The notes below the pieces were generated by a model. The model was not told where the DNA came from. It was given only the letters and a program-made list of their open reading frames with translations, and did not search any database. A DNA stretch of 64,000 bases from Octopus sinensis (lineage: Eukaryota). Location of the stretch: the NCBI RefSeq assembly GCF_006345805.1, contig NC_043007.1:59520001-59584000 (forward strand), given 5' to 3'. This document shows, in pieces, positions 8,007-63,925 of the stretch. A program made the position numbers and the translations under genes. The stretch's first letter is position 1. Every line of letters starts with the position of its first letter.

Positions 8007-8084
8007 CTAAAGATAACACTGTTTTTATTATAATTTTAGTAGTTTGTCTATTTTTGCGTCCTCTTCCATCTTTGACCATTTCCA

Positions 8085-9140
8085 TGAATATTTATTCCTC
8101 TTCTACCACTTCTTATTTTTGTTTTATGTTTTATGTCGGTCATTTCCTGCTCTACCTCCACCCTACATTCCCCGTCCTCCTCCTCCCTTCAACCTTCTCT
8201 CATCCTTCTTTTCCTTTTCTTCTCTTATTCCTCTTCATCCATTCTTCCACCTTTCTTGTTCCTCTTACACCCTTTCTCCTCCTCCTCCTCTCCCCTCAAC
8301 CTTCTCTCATCTTTCTCCCTTCCTTTCCCTATTTTCCTTTTCTTCCCTTGTTCCTCTTCGTCCATTCTTCCTTTTTTGTCCCTCCTTCCCATTCTTCTCC
8401 CCTCCACCTCTCCTCCTCCTCTTCCTCCTCCTCACCTATCTTTTTCCCATTCCTTATCTTTTCCTCCTTCCCTCATACTTCTCGTTTCCTCCTCCCTCCC
8501 TCCCTTCCTTCCTTCACCTCCCATCTCATTTTTTTCTTTCTCCTTCTTCCCCCTCCTCCTCCATCCCTACCTCCCTCCTCCTCCCCTTTTCTCTTCATCT
8601 TCGCTTCCTCCTCCCATTTCTTCCTTTTCCCTTCCCTCTCTTCTTTTCTCCTCCTCATATTTCTCCTCCCATCCATTCTTCTCCCCTTCACCTCTTATCT
8701 TTTCTTCCACTCATACTCTTCCCTTCACTTCCTTTCTTTTCTTCGTCTATCTTAATTGCCCACTTCCACTTTTCTTCCTTTCTAGCTTCCTCCTCTTCCT
8801 CCTCCGCTTCCGCTTCCTCCTCCTCCCTCCGCTTCCTCCTCCTACCTCTGCTTCTTCCCTCCACTTCCTCCTCCTCCTCCTCTTCCCTCTCCTCTTCCAC
8901 ATCCTCCCCTTCCCTGTCCTCTTCCTCTTCCTCATCCTCCTCTGCCACACTCCCCTCTTCCCCCTTCCTCTTCCCCCTTCCTCTTCCTCATCCTCCTCTT
9001 CTCCCTTCCTCTTCCTCATCCCCCTCTTCCACACACCCCTCTTCCCCTTCCTCTTTCTCTCCCCTCCCCTTCCTCCCCACCATCCTCTACCTCCTCCTCG
9101 TCCTCATCCCCCTCTTCCTCCCCCTCCCCCTCTCCTGTTC
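8085..9140 (+). repeat. ~1-kb polypyrimidine/polypurine low-complexity tract with degenerate internal repeats
   Basis: Almost pure C/T on the + strand; recurring units such as tcaaccttctctcatc and ttcctcttcctcatcc. Confidence 0.95.
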
Positions 9141-9349
9141 TGTTAATTAGTCGTTTATGTTTGATCTGACACTTGGACGTATATTTATCACGTTGAATTA
9201 TCGTTGCTTCACTGATCAGCGAAAACGAGGCTTTACATGAAAAATTAATGGAAACTTTCACCATCGGCAGATACTATTGTGCGTCTTTGTAATACATTTC
9301 ATACTTTGTTTCATGCATATGTTTATTCAGGTGCGCGCGCACGTGCAAG

Positions 9350-9533: not shown

Positions 9534-9756
9534 GAATATATGTATATATATATGTCTATATGTAAAGATATATGTATATGTATATATATATGCATATATA
9601 CATATGTATGTATGTATATATATATATATATATGTACATGAATATATATATGCATATATATGTGTATATATATGCATTTATGTATATATGTATATATATG
9701 TATATTTTTATGCATGTATATATGTATATATATATGTATATATGTATATATGTATA
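9350..9756. repeat. Degenerate (TA)n/(TATG)n microsatellite flanking the LINE 3' end
   Basis: Directly visible. Confidence 0.95.
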
Positions 9757-9843
9757 TAACTTAGAATAACTTAGAAAGGTTTTGGCCAGTATTGGCCCAG
9801 GCCATGTCTAACTTAATAGCACCACCTGGCGAAGTCTTTCAAT

Positions 9844-12714
9844 TCAGGATTTGAGCACCAAGGCCCATTCGAGCAGAGAGTTATTGTTTGCGGAGACATA
9901 TCCGGGTGTGGGTGGTTTGTCCGAGACTGTTTGAAGGAATTTGTCCAAAGACCTCTTGAATTTTGTGTGGTCAGTTTCTTTTTTGACGTGTCCTGGTGTA
10001 ATGTTGAAGAGAGCGGGTCCAATTGAGGTGAAATAGTTGTGCCGTATTGTCGTTATGTGATGCGATTTAGATTTTTGTTGTGGACGGATGGCACATGGTC
10101 CAAGCCTTGGATGTATTTTGAAGGTGATGCCAACATCATTCGGACAGTGCTGATGGAATATTTTCCACATCATACAGATAATGTAGCGTTCACGGCGTCG
10201 TTGGAGTGAATACAGTTTCAGCTTCTCTAGTCTACCCCAGTAGTCAAGGTCTGACATGCCATCTATCTTTTTTGTGATTGACCTTTGGGGAGCTTCAATT
10301 CTCATAATATTTTGTTTTGTGTAGGGAGACCACAGTGGACAGCAGTATTCAAGGTGGGGTCGGGCAAAAGTGAGAATCTAGGAACACATTCTGCGGGCCA
10401 TGTCAACTTTGCTGCTTATATGTGTAGCCCAGCTTATGTTGTTGTCCACTGTTACTCCCAAGTCTCTGATGTTGTTGGATGCCATGAGAATTTCTCCAGA
10501 AGGAAGAGAGTATGGGAGTTTCAGAGCGTCCTCCCTTCCAAAGTGGATCAGTTCGAATTTGTCTTCATTTAGCAACATGTTATTCTTTTCCGCCCATTGG
10601 ACAACAGCCAGTAGGTCTGACTGAAGGCTTATTCGGTCATCCACGAAAGAGAAGTGGGCCCAACACAGTGCCTTGTGGGACACCACTGCTGACTTTGGCT
10701 GGGCTGGACTTGACTCCTTCGACTACAACATGTTGGGTTCTGTTAGACAGGAAGCACTTGATCCACCACAGCAGCTTTCCAGTGACACCAATATTGGACA
10801 GCTTTCTCAGAAGGATCTTATGATCAACCCTGTCAAAGGCCTTGCTGAAATCAAGGTAGATGACATCAATGTTGGAACCCTCTCCCAAGGCTCTCAAAAT
10901 GTCATCAAAATGATGCAGTAGCTGCGTCAGGCAATCTCTCTCATTACGGAATCCATGCTGGTTGGAGTTCAGCATATTATGACTCCCAAGGAAGTGAGTC
11001 ATACGCGATCTCAGCACTCTCTCAAATACCTTAATGACATGAGAGGTGAGTGAGATTGGACGGTAATTCACGGCAAGCGATTTGTTTCCTTTTTTGAAAA
11101 CTGGGACAACAGACTGGGATAGAAGGTCTTCTGGTATATATCCAGCATCCAGTGAGTTCCGCCACAGATTGGCTAGAGGGGGTGCAAGTTGGTTTTGACA
11201 CATCTTCAAGACACAAGCAGGGAACCTATCGGGACCTACTGCTGAATTATGCCTCATTTCCTTTATTGCTGCTAAGACATCAGGAGCGCCAAAGGTTATG
11301 TCCGATAAAGTGTATTGGGGAGTAACATCACTGATACAGCCCAGATCAGTCATATCAGGATTGCTGAAAACAGAGCAATATTGTTTCTGCAATATCTCTC
11401 CCATGGTTTTGGCATTGTCTTGAAGAATACCATTTTCATCAATCAGAGGGCCAACAGTAGAACCAGTGACTCTGTGTTTTTTTGCAAATGAAAAGAACAC
11501 TTTGGGATTGAGTTTGATCTTCTCAATGGCCCAGGCCTCTTCAACTCTTCGCTGACTATTGATGATAGACATCATGTTGTTTTGGAGTTTATGTTTTTTA
11601 ATCTCTAGCGACGAGATGGCAGTCAGGTTGGTGTGTTGCTGTTGACAGCATTTCAGCTTGTTGATTTTTTTGTTAATTCTTTTAATTTTCCTGATGAGAG
11701 ATTTTCTATTTCTAGGGATTCGACACTTAGATTGTTTGCAGATCTTAAGGTGTGTTTTGCACATATGTTCGTAATGGTGTCTACAAATGACTGCCAGGAC
11801 TTTTTGATGTTAGTGGATGTGTATGTGTGCGTGAAGGACCAATCGACTTGTGCAAGATCATTATTGATCGCTTCCCAGTTTGCATTGTGGAAATCCATAG
11901 TGTCAAATGGATGAACAGGAGGGATGACATTTGTTTTGCATTTTGGCCAGTGAAATCTCAGATCACAGAGAACCATGTCATGATCGGAGAGAGTAGGGTT
12001 TTCTCACTGCAATATTGTGGATAGTATCAGTGTGATTGCTGAAAATTAAGTCTAAGACGTTTTTATGACCTCTCGTTGGTTCGAGTACCAGTTGGGACAG
12101 GAAGAAATCATTCATGAAGTCAAGAAGCGATTCCACTGCCTCCCTGTCAGGGGTTGAGAGAGAAGAACCTGGCGACAGACTGTTTGTAGACCAGTCAACC
12201 CCGGGAAGGTTGAAGTCTCCCATCATTAAAATGTTGCCAGGTTGACACTGCTGAATGAAACACTTTATGCTGTTGAGGCATTCCTTGAAGCATGGTAGGG
12301 GCGTTTGGGGTGGTCTGTAGAGCCCAACTACTGTTAAGTTGTTGGCTTGACTGAATACAGCGACTGCTTCGCAGTATCCATTGGAAAATATGTTCATGGC
12401 TTCTGTTGAGAATGAATCATGAACAAAAGGCAGTCCCACCCTTTCTCTGCCCAGCACGATCAGCACGAATGGTTTTGAAATTTTTAACTTTCACCTCGGC
12501 TTCCAAGTGAAGGTTACTAAGATGGGTTTCAGTGAGGACGAAGAAAGGGATGTGGTTGGATGGGCCTCGACCCAGTCCTCCAGGAATCTTATCTTCATTT
12601 TTGTGTATTAGTGGAAGGGCTGATGCCTTGGGCATTAAGCAAAAATGTTGAGGCGAGAGTGGATGGTTTTAATTGTTTTGGTGATTTGTTTATTTGATTG
12701 CTTTTTAATGGCAT
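9844..12714 (-). pseudogene. LINE ORF2 (APE endonuclease + reverse transcriptase), disrupted
   Basis: Supplied ORFs 12417-12635, 11978-12466, 11653-11976, 10637-11764, 10378-10686 and 9844-10305 are colinear pieces of one ORF2. About five frameshifts, a W-to-stop change at 10378-10380 and deletions near 10640 and 10370. Confidence 0.92.
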
Positions 12715-13548: not shown

Positions 13549-13803
13549 TCGCTGTTACACTTCCAGATGGGAAGGTTCTTCCTTTGATGCTGACATGCAA
13601 TGTCTGTGCAAGACCCTGCCTCAGTAAAGCTGAACTCAAGAGTCATCTTCGTAGTCATAAAGCGAGACAGATGAGTGACAACCTGGCCACTGGTGGTAGT
13701 GTAACGCACCATACTAATCATATCTGTCGGGCATGTGGAAGAGAGTGTAATTCGGCAGTAAGACTTAAACGACATGCAAAGGTACATGAAGCCCAATTAC
13801 AAC
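13549..13803 (+). mobile_element. Fragment encoding two C2H2 zinc fingers, probably an RTE-type LINE C-terminus
   Basis: [21 protein letters not shown] (13596-13658) and [21 protein letters not shown] (13725-13787) are both C-x2-C-x12-H-x3-H. There is no TGEKP linker, and both sides are TA repeats. Confidence 0.6.
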
Positions 13804-14190
13804 TATATATATATGTATATGCATATGTAATATATATGTATATATATGCATATAAATATGTATATATGTATATATGTATATATATATGCATATATATGTG
13901 TATATGTATATATATGTATATATACTTATATATATATATAGATAGATATATATACATATATATACATATATACATATACATATATATGTACATTTTTATA
14001 TATACATATATATACATATACACATATATATACATATATATACATATATATATACACATATATATATATACATATATTTGCATATATATGTATATATATG
14101 TATGTAGGCATATATATGTGTGCATATATAGATATATATGTGTATATATATCTATATCTATATATAAATGTATATATATATAATTATATA
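13803..14190. repeat. Degenerate (TA)n/(TATG)n microsatellite
   Basis: Directly visible. Confidence 0.95.
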
Positions 14191-14193
14191 TTT

Positions 14194-14262
14194 AAAATGA
14201 ATAAAAGAATGGAGTCGATTAACCGAATTATCAATACTAGGATAATTCATTCACCTACTTAA
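14194..14262. mobile_element. 70-bp internally deleted remnant of the 63191-63620 element family
   Basis: The left part aaagaatggagt matches ~63200-63212. The right part tcgattaaccgaattatcaatactaggataattcattcacctactt matches 63572-63617. Confidence 0.65.
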
Positions 14263-14273
14263 TATAATATATA

Positions 14274-14329
<56 letters not shown>

Positions 14330-14332
<3 letters not shown>

Positions 14333-14702
14333 CATTCTAAGCTACACCAATGCTAGAACGGGACGACACTGCATAGTGCCAAAGATCCCAGCAATGCCAT
14401 CACGCTTCAGGACCAGCTTCTGCAACAGCCTGGGTTTCTGGGGCCCACAGCTTTTTAATATTCTCCCAAAGAGTCTGAGAAACTTGCACAAAGTAGATGT
14501 AGCAGTTTTTAAATCAAATCTGGACATCTTCCTGTCGAGAGTCCCAGATAAACCTACCTCACGGCAAGAGGTGCAAATGAGAGTAGCTATGTCAAATTCC
14601 ATTCTTCACCAAGTGCCATATATTAGAGGAGGTTCTTCGTAATAACAGTGTGGCACAAAACGGCGGTGCATCAGCATGGCCTCAGCTCTAAGCTGAAGCA
14701 AG
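14330..14702 (+). mobile_element. 5'-truncated 3' end of a second CR1-group LINE subfamily
   Basis: GPQLFNILPKSLRN...FKSNLDIFLSRVPDKP is homologous to the ORF2 C-terminus at 9844-10060; stop at 14640-14642; short 3' UTR; begins directly after (TA)n. Confidence 0.88.
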
Positions 14703-14804
14703 CCCCCCAAAATACAGATAAAGGGTGAAATATAATTAATTTAATAAAATCAACAAATTTCATGTGGTCTAGCAACTTGTTGCAAAGACTCTCATTGTTA
14801 TAAT

Positions 14805-15345: not shown

Positions 15346-15893
15346 TTGCTTTCCTTTCTGATATACTTATTTATTCATTTATTGTTGCAGTTAAGCCGAG
15401 TTATAGACATCGATCGATCAGTAAATAAATAAATATGTTGATAAAACTGGTTTGATGCTTTGCCAATTTTGCGAAAAGTCCACTTAATAGCAGATTGGGG
15501 AGGCAGGGTAATGGAAGTCTTCTTATTGTTGGTGGTGGTGACGCTCATGGTGTTTGGTATGATGTCTGTGACGGTGGAGATATTGGGCAGTCAATGGCGT
15601 CGAAATCGATGATGTGTTGTAGTTGTTGTTGCGGTGGTGGTGTGATATACGCCTTGGTTTTCTATCACCGTCCTCCTTTCTTTCTTCCTGTCAACTTTCC
15701 TTCCTTTCTTCATTCTTCGTATCATTTACATCACTGCCACCTACCGGCCACCAACCGCAATCATCGTCGTTCGCCGTTGCCTTAACTCAGTATCACGGAT
15801 GTCACTCTACCAACGCGATATTTATTTAAGTTAGATTGTTCAATGCAATTATGAAGATAGACGAGAGCAGAGATTAACTGTATATAACTTGAA

Positions 15894-16069
15894 TTCTTCT
15901 TCTTCTTCTTCTTCTTCTTCTTCTTCTTCTTCTTCTTCTTCTTCTTCTTCTTCTTCTTCTTTCTCTTCTTTTTCTTCTTCTTCTTCTTCTTCTTCTTCTT
16001 CTTCTTCTCTTCTTCTTCTTCTTCTTCTTCTTCTTCTTCTTCTTCTTCTTCTTCTTCTTCTTCTTCTTC
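15894..16069. repeat. (TTC)n trinucleotide array
   Basis: Directly visible; a second array lies at ~18258-18329. Confidence 0.97.
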
Positions 16070-16307
16070 AAGAACATTTCGGGTTGGTGAGAGTTTTTTT
16101 TTCCTTTTCCATATTCCATGTCTGCCAGTGGAAAGCAAGCAATTGCAACTCATTTCCAAGCAATCATGATCAACACAATCATCATAATCATGTTCATAAT
16201 TCTTGTTATTGCTTGTGTTGTTTGTGTGTGTATTTAATGTATACATACATAAATACATACATACTACACACACACACACACGTAATATATATATATATAT
16301 ATATATA

Positions 16308-16344
<37 letters not shown>

Positions 16345-17007
16345 CACACATATGTACATACATATATACATATATATATGCATATATACATATAGTATGT
16401 TTAATATATAGTATATATATATATAATATATTATATATATATTATATATATATATATATATATAGATAGATAGATAGATATATATATACACATATACTTA
16501 TGTATGCACTTTATACACACGCACTCACACACACACACAGACACATATTGTATATGTCACAATTTCAGAGATACATTTTCTGTTTTTTGTTTTTGTTCTT
16601 TATCTATTTATCTATTTATCTATATATTTATTTATTTAATATCTGAAAGAAAATGTGGCACATCTTAAAATGACTTGAAAGCCGTGCTGGAATATAAATA
16701 TGTCAAAACAAATAGATACTCAAAAAGAAAGATGCTGACAAGATTCTTTGATGTTAGAACTGCAAATTCCCGGAACTTTCACATGTTTGTACTAATAGGT
16801 AACCCCGCTGACGTTTTGTTAAAGAACTGCCTGTGTGTCACTCGAATGTGAAGCAATTACAAACGGAATGATGTAGAAAATGTGTTTTTCCCCTCCTAAT
16901 GCACTGTAATAGATTTAAGTTAGTAAAATCAGTCTCACGTTTTTCAACTTGTTTTTTAGATATATTTACAGTTAATTTTACTATATTGCTTTGTTAATTA
17001 TTAAAAC

Positions 17008-18612: not shown

Positions 18613-21161
18613 TAATTTCATCTCAGTTTTTTTTTATATGAATAACAATTGACGTTGTGCAGCTAAAATCGAATTTTTTCTGAACTTTTGAACAAGTGCT
18701 GGCTTTCTTATATCCAATTTCATCTCTGTTCAATCGTGCCGGATCTTGAAAATGATGGGATTTTCTCTAGTTTTTTTCTATTGTGTGCTTTTGGAATTTC
18801 TTTTTCAGTTAGCTTCTTTTTTTTTGAAACATTTTTGTTGTGTCTTCTTACTTTAAATTTCTCTTCAGTATACTTATCATGTAATTTATATTTTATATTT
18901 TTCTATAAATTTAGAAAAGTTATTTTTATTATGTTTCCATAGTGTATCAACCAATCTTTCTCTGCTTGCGGCTGTAAAAACTCCTTCAATGATATTCAGA
19001 GGGATATTACTTCGCAAAGAAGGCTTTCTTTCAGTTCGTATGCTTCACATAATTGTAAATTGTAAATTGGGATAAAACGTAGTCCGAGTTATTTAGTAAC
19101 CTGAACTGGATCAAACATCTACTTTACTGATTGGTCTGTGGGTTTCATGAGACATGATTTCTTGTATTCTATAGACGGTTAGGTTACTGCATACGAGACG
19201 AAGTCACGGACTATACTGAGTTGTGCAAATCCTTCTTGTGGCTTTTTAAGTGTAGCAGAAATCTTTGGTCTGATTATGTTATCGAGCTACCATACAGCAC
19301 ACTTGATCGAAGCCCCATAATCTTTTTCCAGTACGAAAATTAAGTGCAATGTGATGGTTGGCACGCAAAATTTTGATAACAAATTTTGTGAAAGATGGGT
19401 GCGAGTTTGGTGTATATGAATGATTCTTTATCCCCAAAGAAGTCAGGTGTGTAGAAACATTCTTGAGAACGTCTCGTTCATGAAGACTAATGACCAACTG
19501 GATCTACGCTGGCATTATGTGAGAGCAGCAGATAGATGAGGAGATGAAAAAACCTCGCAACCCGTTCATCTGGCTGGGTTTCCTAAGTTTGCCATTGTAT
19601 GCCGTTCTGGGTTCAAATTACACCGAGGTTTACTTTGCCTTTCATCCTTTTGAGATCGACAAAGTAAGTACCAGCTGAGCACTGAGGTCGATGCAATCTA
19701 CTTAACACCTTCCACGAGTATGCTGGCTGTGTGCTAAAATTTGAAACCAATATTTGGGAGAGTATGTCATTGAAAATGTTGCGAATGGCGACGAGAGGTC
19801 TTTGAAAAACATAACTGATTGATTGATTGATTGATTTATTATTTAGTTGGTTTTAAATAACTAACCAATTGACGAATATTAATTAAAAAGTGCATGTGTT
19901 TATTAGCACAACGGTCCTCACGAGATACAACAAAATCCATAACAAAACGTATTTCAACACACGCGTTCACATTAAAGATCTTGAAAACTAAATACAAAAA
20001 TGAAATAATAATTTGGATATCGAAGTGCCATCAACTTTAAGCCAGTTCCAAGAAGCTGAGTCTGAAATGCAGTTTCAACCCCTTCTTTTCTCATACACTA
20101 ATCATTCTCTGGGAAAACGATGAACGTAACACAATTCCATTTCTCTTTTACAAATTAACTAGAGACCTCATACTTAGTTGTAAGAAACTTCTGTACACAC
20201 CTATGAAGGAGTGCTATGGAATAGAGCCACAGTACATTCGAGGTGACTGTGTGTCTTCTTTAAGATTCTCGTTGTAGCCATTTCGTATTCTCACATCACT
20301 AATATCACCGAGAAAGTCACGAATACGCAAACGTCCCATTGCTATTAGACTATAGCTTCGAAAGCACGGTGATGCTTATATTCAGAACCAATATAAAGAA
20401 GTTAGATGCTTACTTGATAACTTGGCATTGGTTTGCGCGCATGAGATTAAATCTGTCTAGCTGAAAAGAGATTCTTGCTTCTGCAGTTGATGCTGTGATT
20501 GATATTGGTATTGCTGTTGATGTGGTTGCTGGAGTTGTTGATATTGCTGTTTAGTACCGGATTAACACTTCTTAATTAGACCTATAATGAAGCATTCAAA
20601 CGATGGTCGACTCATTTTTCTCCAAATATAATATAGTCAACGAAGGAATTTGACCTACTATAAATAACAGCAGAATGTCTCTCAGATCTCTTATGAAAGT
20701 GTCTTTAATTGTAACCCTGGGCCGACCAATGTCTTTTAGTTGAACTGGTGGCCGGAAATAATGTGGAAGCTCATAATAATGTGGCGCGTGATTATGTGTG
20801 CGCACTCGTGTGGTGTAGTGTGTGTGTGTGTGTGTGTGTGTGTGTTGTGTGTATGTGTGTGTGTATGTGTGTGTGGTGTGTGAGAGAGGAGAGAGAGAGA
20901 GGGAGGGAGGGAGAGAGAGTGTGTGTGTGTGTCTTTGTATTGTTTTTGAACGCTCCACCGCTTGACTATGTATACTGGTTTGTTTAATTCCCCTATAACT
21001 TAGCGGTTAAGCAAAAGATGCCGGTAGAATAAATTCCAAACTTACAAGTAAGTAGTGGGGTCGATTTTTTCGACTAAATCCTTTAAGGAGTTGCTCCAGC
21101 ATTGCCGAAATCCAAAGAATGAAAGTAATAGCAGAATAAAAGAACAATAAGAGAATAACCT

Positions 21162-21251
<90 letters not shown>

Positions 21252-23703: not shown

Positions 23704-23989
23704 TGTATGTGCTTGTGTATCTGCGTTTGTCCCCCATGTGGGTGTGTTTATGTCCCAGTAACTTAGCGGTTTGGCTCAAGTGATCTATAGAAGTGATCTA
23801 AGCTTACAAAGAATAAGGGTCGATTTGTTTATCTAAAGGCGGTGCTCCAGCATGGCCGCAGTCAAATGACTGAAACAATTAAAAGAATATAAAAATGAAA
23901 AGAAGAAAAGGAATAAAAGAATATATTATTATTATTATTATTATTATTATATTATTATTATTATTATTATTATTATCATCATCATCATT

Positions 23990-30489: not shown

Positions 30490-30950
<461 letters not shown>

Positions 30951-32934: not shown

Positions 32935-33080
32935 TTTTACTCTACTCTTTTACTTGTTTCAGTCATTTGACTGCGGCCATGCTGGAGCACCGCCTTTAGT
33001 CGAGCAAATCGACCCCAGGACTTATTCTTTGTAAGCCCAGTACTTATTCTATCGGTCTCTTTTGCCGAACCGCTAACTGT
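32935..33080 (-). mobile_element. SINE family S2, 3' part
   Basis: Reverse complement of the S2 tail. Confidence 0.85.
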
Positions 33081-40684: not shown

Positions 40685-41027
40685 TTCTTTTCTACACTAG
40701 GCACAAGACCAGAAATTTTGAGGGAGGGGGTAGTCGATTAGATGCACCCTAGTACGCAAGTGGTACTTAATTTATCGACTCCGAAAGGATGAAGGGCAAA
40801 ATCGACCTCGGCGGAAATTGAACTCAGAACGTAAAGACGGACGAAATGCCGCTAAGGATGTTGTTTCAGTCATTAGGCTCCGGCCATGCTGGGGCATCGC
40901 CGTGATGAATTTTTAACCGGATGAATCGACACCAGAACTTATTTTTGTTAAGCCTAGTACTTACTCTGTCGATCACTTTTGTGAAACCGCTAATTTATGG
41001 AGACGTAAACACACCAAAACCGGTTGT

Positions 41028-41541: not shown

Positions 41542-41611
<70 letters not shown>

Positions 41612-41832
41612 TATATATGTATATGTTTGTGTGTCTGTGTTTGTCCCCCCAACATCGCTTGACAACCGATGCTGGTGTGTTTACGTCCCCGTAACTTAGC
41701 GGTTCGGTAAAAGATACCGATAGAATAAGTACTAGGCTTACAAAGAATAAGTCCTGGGGTCGATTTGCTCTACTAAATGCGGTGCTCCAGCATGGCCGCA
41801 GTCAAATGACTGAAACAAGTAAAAGAGTAAAT
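41374..41832 (+). mobile_element. Full-length tRNA-derived SINE, family S2 (reference copy)
   Basis: A-box-like TGGCTATGTGG, B-box-like GGTTCAGTTCC, internal (TA)n, LINE-like tail gcggtgctccagcatggccgcagtcaaatgactgaaacaag and an A-rich end. Confidence 0.92.
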
Positions 41833-44818: not shown

Positions 44819-44904
44819 ATATATATATATATATTTCTATATTCTTTATTATACATATATATATATTTATTATATATATATATTCATTATACTTTCTTTT
44901 ATTC

Positions 44905-45099
44905 TATTACTTGTTTCAATCCTTTGACTGCGGCCATGCTGGAGCACCGCCTTTAGTCGAATGGAATCTACCCCAGGACTTATTCTTTGTAAGCCTAGTA
45001 CTTATTCTATCGGTCCCTTTCGCCGAACCGTTAAGTTACAGAGACCTAAACACACCAGCATCGGTTGTCAAGCGATGTTGGGGACAAACACAGATACAC

Positions 45100-47939: not shown

Positions 47940-48240
47940 GGTAAAGAAGCTTGGTTCGTTAACACACAGTTATAGGTTCAGTCCCACTATGTCATACCTT
48001 GGGCAAGTATCTTCTATTTTAGCCTCGGGCTGACCAAAGCCTTGTGAGTGTATTTGGTAAACGGAAACTGAAAGAAGCCCGTCGTGTATATGTGTGTGTG
48101 TATGTCTTTGTATCTGTGTCTGTCCCCTCCACCGCTTGACAACTGGTGTTGGTGTGTTTACGTCCCTGTATCTTAGCGGTGCGGCAAAAGAGCCCTGGGT
48201 CGATTCATTCGATTAAAAATTCAAGACGATGCTCAGCATA
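47940..48240 (+). mobile_element. SINE family S2, internally deleted
   Basis: ggttcagtcccact...ttgggcaagtatcttct...aaagaagcccgtcg. Confidence 0.8.
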
Positions 48241-48259
48241 ACCGAACTCCAATAACAAA

Positions 48260-48309
<50 letters not shown>

Positions 48310-48404
48310 TGTATGTATATATATATACATATATATATATATATTAAATGTATGTGTATTTTTCCAGTGTTATAAATAACAAGGAAAAAAATACGCAGTT
48401 ACCA

Positions 48405-63759: not shown

Positions 63760-63925
63760 TGTGTTTGTTCCCCACCACCGTAACATCGCAGTTCCAATAG
63801 AATAAGTACTAGGCTTAAAAAAATGAACTGGAGGCGATTCCTTCGACTAAAATTTCTTCAAAGTTGTGACCCAGCATAGCCGCAGTCTAATGACTGAAAC
63901 AAGTAAAAGAGAAAAGATAAAAGAT
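63760..63925 (+). mobile_element. SINE family S2, 3' part
   Basis: Tail cccagcatagccgcagtctaatgactgaaacaagtaaaaga. Confidence 0.8.

What the first reader, a model, noticed from the sequence alone, without database searches (positions are those of the whole stretch)
9779..9826. Shared 3'-terminal motif with a fully covarying hairpin in two LINEs and the S2 SINE
Seen: LINE 1 (minus, 9779-9826) reads GGTGGTGC..12nt..CATGGCC tg [GGCCA atac TGGCC] aaaac. LINE 2 (14662-14702) reads GGCGGTGC atcag CATGGCC [TCAGC tctaa GCTGA] agcaag. SINE S2 (41779-41820, also ~23838, 30898, 32960 and 63870) reads GCGGTGC tccag CATGGCC g [CAGTC aaat GACTG] aaacaag. The flanking motifs are conserved while the 5-bp stem changes sequence but keeps pairing. 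Established: stringent LINEs of the L2/CR1 group recognise a 3' stem-loop, and partner SINEs borrow it (eel UnaL2/UnaSINE1). Inference: this is the cis-recognition element of an octopod LINE lineage and identifies the LINE partner of SINE S2.
Basis: partly seen in the sequence, partly recalled or inferred. Interest (0 to 1): 0.7.

Follow-up and report, generated by a model that had tools for sequence, protein, structure and literature searches.

The report
Shared LINE/SINE 3' two-hairpin tail
Two broken octopus LINE retrotransposons and the S2 SINE end in the same small folded RNA module (two hairpins, then a short tandem repeat), the kind of 3' tag that LINE enzymes are known to recognise and SINEs to borrow, so it is a real but expected feature.

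Summary
The quoted sequences are at the stated coordinates, and the motif occurs 6 times in the window against 0 expected by chance.

The "conserved flanking motifs" GGYGGTGC...CATGGCC are the two arms of a longer hairpin, P1. P1 has a 3-bp base, an invariant G.G mismatch, a conserved G.U pair and a variable upper stem. After P2 come RAAAC and an 8-10-nt microsatellite.

The same module sits at the 3' end of related LINE ORFs in Octopus sinensis, Argonauta hians and about 15 marine-metagenome contigs. Four of those loci were not used to build the model. About 88-90% of cells pair, against 28-47% in slid controls, and many pairs change on both sides.

"Fully covarying" is overstated, because S2 and LINE2 share the CAG/CTG core of P2. 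The S2 tail is 76-77% identical to LINE2-type tails and 52-57% identical to all others. Its partner therefore belongs to the LINE2-type lineage, not to LINE1.

This matches the known stringent CR1/L2-type LINE-SINE shared-tail paradigm, already shown for bivalve CR1. It is a new member of a known kind, and its function was not tested.

The parts
9798..9828 (-). LINE1 hairpin P1: CAGGU|G|GUG-CUA..loop..UAG-A-CAU|G|GCCUG. It has a 5-bp base, a G.G 1x1 mismatch, a G.U pair and an upper stem.
   Evidence: RNAfold MFE and centroid are identical, z=-2.57. CM hit 9775-9828, 49 bits, E=3e-9.
9784..9797 (-).
9779..9783 (-). Conserved single-stranded AAAAC (RAAAC) after P2.
   Evidence: The two As after P2 are invariant or nearly invariant in alignment A3.
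9756..9776 (-). LINE1 terminal microsatellite (TTCTAAGTTA), 2.1 copies.
   Evidence: TRF period 10, 100% match.
9844..12466 (-). LINE1 coding remnant, 5'-truncated with at least 3 frame breaks. It comprises an APE endonuclease (11978-12466), the RT (10637-11764 and 10378-10686) and a C-terminal domain (9844-10305).
   Evidence: ORFs. PF14529 E=3e-11 and PF00078 E=4e-20. Homologues in Argonauta hians and Octopus sinensis.
14331..14645 (+). LINE2: a 5'-truncated remnant holding only the C-terminal ~100 codons of a second LINE lineage.
   Evidence: Translation. It is 59% identical to an Argonauta LINE2-type C-terminus and 34% identical to LINE1.
14662..14681 (+). LINE2 hairpin P1: GGC|G|GUGC-AUCA-GCAU|G|GCC.
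   Evidence: z=-2.58. CM hit 14660-14703, E=9e-6.
14682..14702 (+). LINE2 hairpin P2 (UCAGCU-CUA-AGCUGA) followed by AGCAAG.
41630..41830 (+). S2 SINE copy. Module at 41776-41820: P1 41778-41797 (first G mutated to T), P2 41799-41812, then AAACAAG and (GTAAAAGA)n.
32943..33076 (-). S2 copy, 5'-truncated. Module at 32952-32996.
   Evidence: The fold is 96% of the ensemble, z=-3.09.
23741..23886 (+). S2 copy. Module at 23836-23880.
44899..45098 (-). Module at 44909-44953, where P2 carries a G.U pair (GAUUG).
30745..30948 (+). Older S2 subfamily copy. Module at 30895-30939, with P1 loop CCCA.
40859..41027 (-). Module at 40859-40903, with P1 GGCGAUGC-CCCA and a decayed P2.
   Evidence: Its P1 matches the O. 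sinensis LINE2-type tail.
63794..63911 (+). Degenerate S2 copy. Module at 63860-63904, with P1 mutated and P2 intact.
   Evidence: E=1.3

Best explanation
The feature is the 3'-terminal cis-acting RNA module of CR1/L2-like (APE+RT) LINEs of octopods. The S2 SINE carries a copy of it.

The module has four parts:
1. Hairpin P1, with base GGY/RCC, an invariant G.G mismatch, a conserved G.U pair and a lineage-specific upper stem and loop.
2. A short hairpin P2, whose sequence is free as long as it pairs.
3. A single-stranded RAAAC.
4. An 8-10-nt microsatellite.

Inferred mechanism, by analogy with eel UnaL2, zebrafish ZfL2 and amniote CR1: the LINE ORF2 protein binds the hairpins of its own transcript. 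The microsatellite end is positioned on the nicked target, and target-primed reverse transcription starts there. S2 RNA presents the LINE2-type version of the module and is therefore copied in trans by a LINE2-type enzyme.

Shown here: the structure, its position, its conservation with compensatory changes, its strand specificity and its presence on the SINE. Inferred: protein binding and the requirement for mobilisation.
For: - Structure: all six elements folded give the same two-hairpin MFE, with z from -1.5 to -3.1. RNAalifold recovers P1 and P2 de novo.
- Pairing in the structure-blind MAFFT alignment A3: 89.7% of cells pair against 28-47% when the 3' partners are slid, and 0/500 shuffles reach the covariation score.
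- Pairing in the model-fitted alignment A4 (23 sequences): 88.2% against 29-43%, 9 of 12 pairs have changes on both sides, and 0/500 shuffles reach any measure.
- Stepwise compensatory series:
  - P1 base pair 3: C-G (S2, LINE2), U.G (LINE1, L007), U-A (L005, L008, L009).
  - P1 pair 8-24: UA, AU, CG and GC.
  - P2 pair 4: U-A (L009), U.G (L008), C-G (L005).
  - P2: S2 CAGUC/GACUG against Argonauta LINE2-type CAGCC/GGCUG.

- Position: the module is always at or just after the ORF2 stop and directly upstream of a tandem 8-10-mer.
- Independent validation: four loci not in the seed score at the expected place (L055 E=3e-8, L052 and L053 E=1e-4, L054 E=0.19). So do loci from O. sinensis and Argonauta hians.
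- Not a coding constraint: the stop codon lies upstream of P1, inside P1 or inside P2 depending on the family, and S2 is non-coding.
- Strand specificity: 51 G.U cells against 7 A.C cells, and 88% paired on the sense strand against 72% on the antisense strand.
- S2 partner: the S2 tail is 77% and 76% identical to LINE2-type tails and 52-57% identical to other tails. An O. sinensis LINE2-type copy has the same GGCGAUGC-CCCA-GCAU P1 as the older S2 subfamily.
- Literature: stringent LINEs recognise 3' stem-loops (PMC4176376). CR1 requires a 3' hairpin plus an 8-10-mer microsatellite (PMC8665684). Bivalve CR1-14_CGi shares stem-loop tails with SINEs, with compensatory changes (PMC4824008).
Against: - No functional data exist. 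Binding and requirement are by analogy only.
- All LINE copies examined are dead fragments, and several have broken P2 pairs (L003, L054, L057).
- The sequences are related. The seed was picked by the P1 motif, so the statistics for the P1 base are partly circular. P1 upper-stem pairing and P2 pairing were not selection criteria.
- No LINE2-type copy with the S2 microsatellite (GTAAAAGA)n was found, and the window LINE2 shows no clear terminal repeat.
- The exact LINE clade (CR1, L2 or another) was not resolved.
Confidence: 0.75

Rival explanations
1. Shared by descent only. S2 acquired the LINE2-type tail once, for example by template switching. The hairpins now serve another role, such as RNA stability or 3'-end formation, or no role, and S2 is mobilised by a different and more active LINE such as the RTE elements reported as active in octopus.
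For: RTE is the only octopus LINE with published evidence of recent activity (PMC9115989). No intact LINE2-type element or matching microsatellite was found.
Against: The module sits at the very 3' end of S2, followed by a microsatellite, as in its LINE relatives. P1 and P2 are kept intact between S2 subfamilies and LINE2-type LINEs with compensatory change. That pattern implies selection on master copies for pairing.
Confidence: 0.12
2. The conservation reflects protein coding. The C-terminal extension of ORF2 (for example ...GG.A...) is read through the motif, rather than the motif acting as RNA structure.
For: In L005, L008, L009, L052 and L053 the ORF runs into P1, where GGUGG encodes Gly-Gly.
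Against: In LINE1, L001, L049, L003, L006, L007, L050, L051, L055 and LINE2 the stop lies upstream of the module, and S2 has no ORF. Compensatory double changes and conserved G.U pairs are not explained by coding.
Confidence: 0.03
3. Chance palindromes. Short GC-rich inverted repeats (GGCC-type) next to a conserved LINE-derived sequence, with no structural meaning.
For: Each single P2 hairpin is only marginally unusual (p = 0.003-0.7).
Against: A hairpin recurs at the same place in every lineage (Fisher p = 1.5e-5 to 4e-9). Slid-partner controls fall to 28-47% paired.
Confidence: 0.02
4. The element acts at the DNA level, for example as a cDNA or second-strand hairpin or as a target-site mimic, rather than as an RNA.
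For: None specific. Inverted repeats can fold in either nucleic acid.
Against: G.U pairs are frequent and conserved on the sense strand (51 cells) and would be A.C mismatches on the complement. Antisense pairing drops to 72%.
Confidence: 0.05

Closest known systems
Eel UnaL2 LINE / UnaSINE1 shared 3' tail (Kajikawa & Okada 2002) and zebrafish ZfL2-1/ZfL2-2 (Hayashi et al. 2014, PMC4176376)
   Same: A stringent-type design. A conserved stem-loop in the last ~50-60 nt of the LINE, followed by short terminal repeats, is copied onto a partner SINE. Each LINE lineage has its own tail version.
   Different: There is no sequence similarity and no Rfam family matches. Here there are two adjacent hairpins, with an invariant G.G mismatch and G.U pair in the first. 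The loops of the second hairpin are not conserved. No assay was done.
Amniote CR1 3' structure: hairpin plus 8-mer (rarely 10-mer) microsatellite (Suh 2015, as cited in PMC8665684)
   Same: APE+RT LINE whose 3' end is one or more hairpins followed by an 8-10-nt tandem repeat instead of poly(A). The repeat unit differs between subfamilies (ATCTAAGT, ATCAAAGT, TTCTAAGTTA, TAAAACAT, CCCAAGGTA).
   Different: The hairpin and microsatellite sequences differ from the amniote ATTCTRTG. Clade membership by RT phylogeny was not tested.
Oyster CR1-14_CGi with BivaV-SINE2 and BivaCORE-SINE1 (Nishihara et al. 2016, PMC4824008), and CR1-1_CGi with Vhc_1 SINEs (Matetovici et al. 2016, PMC4758252)
   Same: A mollusc CR1-type LINE and SINEs share a 3' tail that folds into conserved stem-loops, with compensatory mutations. 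This is the same argument and the same phylum.
   Different: The host class differs (cephalopods) and the SINE differs. I could not compare the sequences because figures are not held and no supplement is held, so homology of the motifs is unknown.

Membership tests
Stringent-type LINE/SINE shared 3' tail (UnaL2/UnaSINE1 paradigm) | The element lies at the extreme 3' end of the LINE, just upstream of terminal short repeats. | tested here: met
   LINE1 9779-9828 followed by (TTCTAAGTTA)x2. The arrangement is the same in L001, L049, L003-L009, L050, L055, L057 and L058.
Stringent-type LINE/SINE shared 3' tail (UnaL2/UnaSINE1 paradigm) | Conserved stem-loop maintained by compensatory substitutions. 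| tested here: met
   88-90% of cells pair against 28-47% in slid controls. 6-9 of 12 pairs have double-sided changes. 0/500 shuffles reach the covariation score. RNAalifold agrees.
Stringent-type LINE/SINE shared 3' tail (UnaL2/UnaSINE1 paradigm) | The same tail is present at the 3' end of a short non-autonomous element in the same genome. | tested here: met
   Seven S2 copies in the window end in the module. The tail is 77% identical to LINE2. The S2 body is unrelated to the LINE2 upstream sequence.
Stringent-type LINE/SINE shared 3' tail (UnaL2/UnaSINE1 paradigm) | The tail is bound by the cognate ORF2 protein and is required for retrotransposition of the LINE and SINE. | not testable with these tools
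   Needs retrotransposition and binding assays.
CR1-clade LINE (CR1/L2 superfamily) | ORF2 with an N-terminal APE endonuclease and an RT. | tested here: met
   PF14529/PF03372 and PF00078 on LINE1 ORFs. Relatives carry both domains.
CR1-clade LINE (CR1/L2 superfamily) | 3' hairpin plus an 8-10-nt microsatellite, with no poly(A). | tested here: met
   The definition is as given in PMC8665684.
CR1-clade LINE (CR1/L2 superfamily) | The RT groups with CR1 rather than L2, Rex1, Jockey and others in a reference phylogeny. | not testable with these tools
   No reference LINE library (Repbase or RTclass1) is available. Named hits are only 'hypothetical protein'. The resemblance of the C-terminal domain (L.L.SL..RR.R; FK..LD..L) to chicken CR1 is from memory, so it is a lead and not a test.
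Any Rfam family, including curated LINE 3' elements | Match to a curated covariance model. | tested here: not met
   No hit at gathering thresholds in the whole window. No relevant hit at E<=10 around LINE1, LINE2 and S2; only microsatellite look-alikes of miRNA families appeared.
tRNA-derived SINE (for S2) | 5' head recognisably derived from a tRNA, with pol III A and B boxes. | tested here: inconclusive
   ARAGORN finds no tRNA-like gene in the window and there is no Rfam tRNA hit on S2. Only weak box-like strings are seen by eye. S2 does behave as a SINE: it is ~200 bp, non-coding, multi-copy, and has a common 5' end and a LINE-type tail.

The most novel reading that the evidence does not exclude
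P1, with its invariant G.G mismatch next to a conserved G.U pair, is a shared docking platform for the ORF2 proteins of a whole clade of marine-invertebrate CR1-like LINEs. The P1 apex (and possibly P2) acts as a lineage-specific address. The very large octopus-specific S2 SINE expansion then followed capture of the LINE2-type address. This would give a natural series of matched protein and RNA variants (LINE1-type, LINE2-type and the L005, L007 and L017 groups) in which bipartite recognition and SINE partner switching could be dissected. More distant relatives keep the same architecture of two hairpins plus a microsatellite, but with entirely different sequence.
Probability: 0.3. Interest if true: 0.55.

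Novelty: new member of a known kind. Interest (0 to 1): 0.35.

Why it matters
SINEs make up roughly 40% of the repeat content of octopus genomes (PMC8967140), and their expansion is a headline feature of those genomes. I found no paper in the held library that names the LINE that moves them. A defined two-hairpin tail shared with one LINE lineage gives four things:
- a concrete candidate partner;
- a covariance model for annotating 3'-anchored LINE and SINE copies in cephalopod genomes;
- specific mutants for testing stringent recognition, namely G.G, G.U, the P1 apex, and P2 stem-breaking and compensatory changes;
- another invertebrate example for comparing how CR1/L2-type enzymes read their templates.

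It does not change the general picture, which has been established since 2002 and was extended to molluscs in 2016.

Tried and rejected
- Rfam, at gathering and permissive thresholds, gave nothing relevant.
- ARAGORN on the window found no tRNA-like head for S2.
A trimmed alignment worked.
- A strict regex for the motif in 46 metagenome loci found only L001. Reading the tails by eye was needed to see the diverged versions.
- The model did not detect the module in more distant relatives (L012-L048) or in the snow-crab LINE. These have different hairpins, so the specific motif is not universal in the clade.
- L004 folds differently, as one long hairpin, and was left out of the seed. L046 and L017 are misaligned by MAFFT and the CM, and they add 'unpaired' cells.
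- The CM also missed a decayed O. sinensis LINE2-type tail that BLAST found.
- I considered scanning metagenomes directly with the DNA motif. I rejected this because the GC-rich ~15-base pattern (14 plain bases plus one degenerate) would give tens of thousands of chance hits, and the single scan was better spent on the protein-anchored search.
- No supplement text is held for PMC4824008, so the oyster CR1-14_CGi tail could not be compared.
- The search of PMC9795677 only matched 'sinensis'.
- Clade assignment of the LINEs could not be done for lack of reference sequences.
- The automated search for hairpins upstream of tandem repeats in distant loci was noisy and was replaced by a motif-anchored alignment.

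Full report
OBSERVATION.
- LINE1, minus strand 9826-9779: GGTGGTGC, 12 nt, CATGGCC, TG, GGCCA-ATAC-TGGCC, AAAAC.
- LINE2, 14662-14702: GGCGGTGC-ATCAG-CATGGCC-TCAGC-TCTAA-GCTGA-AGCAAG.
- SINE S2, 41779-41820: GCGGTGC-TCCAG-CATGGCC-G-CAGTC-AAAT-GACTG-AAACAAG.

GGTGC-N(3-16)-CATGGCC occurs six times in the window, against none in 100 shuffles. BLAST and an alignment of the S2 copies show nine copies or fragments. Seven of them keep the tail, at 23836-23880, 30895-30939, 32952-32996(-), 40859-40903(-), 41776-41820, 44909-44953(-) and 63860-63904.

LINE1 is a 5'-truncated, frame-shifted APE+RT element spanning 12466-9756 on the minus strand. LINE2 is a ~375-bp 3' fragment at 14331-14706 that encodes only the last ~100 codons.

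When the tails are folded, the two "conserved flanking motifs" pair with each other.

I call this hairpin P1. From the bottom up it consists of:
- a 3-bp base, GGY/RCC;
- a 1x1 G.G mismatch;
- a G.U pair;
- an upper stem of variable length and sequence.

Upper stems seen are S2/LINE2 GUGC-NYCA-GCAU, LINE1 GUG-CUA...UAG-A-CAU, L007 GAGACG/UGUCUU and L009 GCUCUG/CAGAGU.

P2 is followed by single-stranded RAAAC and then a tandem 8-10-mer. LINE1 carries (TTCTAAGTTA)x2.1 and S2 carries (GTAAAAGA)n.

All six elements folded with the tool give this two-hairpin structure as both MFE and centroid, with z-scores from -1.5 to -3.1.

RELATED SEQUENCES. The C-terminal ORF of LINE1 has 85 relatives in the protein collection. 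The LINE2 C-terminus aligns to the same family through the motifs LYSLQRRRERY and FK..LD.FL..PD.P.

A protein-anchored scan of metagenome contigs gave 46 loci. This scan was blind to the RNA motif. Twelve exact-protein look-ups gave further loci, including Octopus sinensis (L057), Argonauta hians (L058) and the snow crab (L059).

The RT of LINE1 is closest to proteins of Argonauta hians (54%) and Octopus sinensis (69% over half its length). An S2 copy 85% identical to the window's, and a LINE1-type element 70-78% identical to it, lie in the O. sinensis locus. The window is therefore octopod.

Reading the 3' ends shows the same layout in L001, L049, L003, L005/L010, L006, L007, L008, L009, L050 and L051, and in altered form in L017 and L046. 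The layout is GGY-G-G...U-G-RCC, a short hairpin, RAAAC and a microsatellite.

A covariance model built from 15 of these finds nothing else in the window. It does find the module at the expected place in four loci that were not used to build it: L055 E=3e-8, L052 and L053 E=1e-4, and L054 E=0.19. It also finds it in the O. sinensis and Argonauta loci.

IS THE STRUCTURE REAL? On the structure-blind MAFFT alignment, 89.7% of cells form standard pairs. This falls to 28-47% when the 3' partners are slid by 1-3 columns, and no shuffle out of 500 reaches the covariation score.

On the 23-sequence model-fitted alignment the figures are 88.2% against 29-43%. Nine of 12 pairs have changes on both sides, and 0/500 shuffles reach any measure. 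RNAalifold predicts both hairpins by itself.

The changes follow classic compensatory paths:
- the third base pair of P1 is C-G, U.G or U-A;
- P1 pair 8-24 is UA, AU, CG or GC;
- P2 pair 4 goes U-A (L009), U.G (L008), C-G (L005);
- P2 of octopus S2 (CAGUC/GACUG) differs from an Argonauta LINE2-type LINE (CAGCC/GGCUG) by one double change.

A single P2 hairpin is not impressive on its own, with shuffle p from 0.003 to 0.7. Its recurrence at the same spot in every lineage is significant, with Fisher p = 1.5e-5 for six lineage representatives.

Caveats:
- The sequences are related.
- Several are decayed genomic fossils, with pairs broken in L003, L054 and L057.
- The seed was chosen by the P1 base motif, so only the upper P1 stem and P2 are unbiased tests.

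Coding constraint is excluded as the cause. The stop codon lies upstream of P1, inside P1 or inside P2 in different families, and S2 has no ORF.

The structure is specific to the sense strand. There are 51 G.U cells against 7 A.C cells, and 88% pairing against 72% on the complement. This points to an RNA and to the strand of the LINE/SINE transcript.

TWO LINEAGES, AND THE PARTNER OF S2. LINE1 and LINE2 are only 34% identical in the C-terminal domain. LINE2 is 59% identical to an Argonauta element whose tail is GGUGGUGC-ACCA-GCAUGGCC-G-CAGCC-GACUG-GGCUG-AAAC followed by (TAAAACAT)n.

LINE1-type tails share the long P1 apex UAUUAAGUUAG and a GGCC-type P2. They are found in the window, O. sinensis, Argonauta, L001 and L049.

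The S2 tail is 77% and 76% identical to the two LINE2-type tails and 52-57% identical to all others. A decayed LINE2-type copy in O. sinensis has the same GGCGAUGC-CCCA-GCAU P1 as the older S2 subfamily.

S2 therefore borrowed the LINE2-type module, not the LINE1-type one. S2 and LINE2 share the CAG...CTG core of P2, so "fully covarying" applies only to LINE1 against the other two. The precise partner family remains unidentified, because none of the LINE2-type copies seen has the S2 microsatellite.

HOW IT MOST LIKELY WORKS (inference). By analogy with UnaL2 and ZfL2, stringent LINEs recognise their own 3' stem-loop through the EN-RT linker of ORF2 (PMC4176376). By analogy with CR1, a 3' hairpin plus an 8-10-mer microsatellite is the recognition and priming site (Suh 2015, via PMC8665684). 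On that basis the LINE protein would bind the hairpins of the RNA that encoded it, and reverse transcription would start in the microsatellite annealed to the nicked target.

Within each lineage the P1 apex is conserved, and the G.G/G.U motif is conserved everywhere. The P2 loops vary freely: AUAC, UGUGUU, AUAA and CGGCGC within the LINE1 type alone. I therefore propose that P1 is the main protein-recognition element and that P2 is needed only as a helix.

COMPARISON WITH WHAT IS KNOWN. The design is that of the stringent LINE/SINE shared tail. [quoted passage not shown]

The features that define such a tail are met: position, compensated stem-loop, and presence on a SINE. The functional features cannot be tested here.

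The LINEs have the CR1-type hallmarks of APE+RT and of a hairpin plus an 8-10-mer microsatellite with no poly(A). Clade placement by RT phylogeny could not be done. No Rfam family matches.

I found no paper in the held library that names a LINE partner for octopus SINEs or describes this motif. Published work on active octopus LINEs concerns RTE (PMC9115989).

VERDICT. This is a real, well-supported structured 3' module, larger than described, that links the S2 SINE to one of two octopod CR1-like LINE lineages. It is a new member of a known kind. It is useful for annotation and for designing assays, but it would not surprise a specialist. Interest 0.35.

DEAD ENDS. See the tried-and-rejected field. 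In brief:
- a strict regex across the loci found only one extra locus;
- the model does not reach the more distant relatives or the crab LINE;
- L004, L017 and L046 fit poorly;
- no supplement was held for the oyster comparison;
- S2 has no detectable tRNA head.

Noticed in passing
L021, L022, L025, L028, L030-L036 (last ~70 nt before the terminal repeat): More distant relatives of the same LINE C-terminal domain (30-37% aa identity) lack the GGYGG...TGRCC motif. They carry their own two-hairpin module inside the end of the ORF, upstream of an (ACAAAGTA)n-type microsatellite. Hairpin A has a conserved GAAAGC loop followed by CTGG. Hairpin B is variable, 4-9 bp. RNAalifold predicts 7 pairs, 5 of them with double-sided changes. 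The end of S2, GAAACAAGUAAA, resembles these repeats.
   Followed up: partly
L059 10430-10640 (Chionoecetes opilio contig): The crab relative ends in a CGCC/GGCG hairpin, AAAT and (ACTAAGTAA)n, without the P1 motif. It is followed directly by a tandem satellite of ~31 bp (..GAAGCCTKRGTGAGCCTTAACCTAACAGTGRT..).
   Followed up: no
L058 13380-14370, minus strand (Argonauta hians): Two LINE2-type 3' ends lie ~400 bp apart in the same orientation, each followed by (TAAAACAT)n and long AT-rich repeats. This looks like a local duplication or nested insertions.
   Followed up: no
window 13590-13790 (+): An ORF embedded in TA-rich microsatellite encodes two weak C2H2 zinc-finger motifs (CNVCARPC...HLRSH and CRACGREC...HAKVH). 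The hit to zf-C2H2_4 is E=1e-5, just below the Pfam cut-off. Its origin is unknown.
   Followed up: partly
window 9602-9758, 14250-14330, 41600-41630, 44830-44900, 48190-48380, 21080-21200: The ends of LINE1, LINE2 and most S2 copies abut (TA)n, (TG)n or TATACA-type microsatellites. The same is seen at the Argonauta LINE tails. This could reflect an endonuclease target preference or growth of the terminal repeats. It was not tested against the background density of such repeats.
   Followed up: no
window 8044-9150 and 15782-16363: Long low-complexity tracts are present, CT-rich at the first site and (GAA)n/(A)n at the second. They produce spurious long ORFs on both strands.
   Followed up: no
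window 9700-9760 and 13800-14150: TA/TG microsatellites give sub-threshold Rfam hits to several miRNA families (mir-297, mir-3149, mir-1277, mir-466). These are composition artefacts.
   Followed up: yes
L001 (JGI metagenome 3300037538), L049 (ENA ERZ23499376), L002/L050 (GCA_024449705.1): Contigs labelled as metagenome, or of unstated origin, carry LINE1-type tails nearly identical to the octopod ones. L001 has the (ATCAAAGT)n repeat, of which O. sinensis shows a single degenerate unit. L049 has the (ATCTAAGT)n repeat seen in Argonauta. They are probably cephalopod DNA within those samples, so they are not independent lineages.
   Followed up: partly
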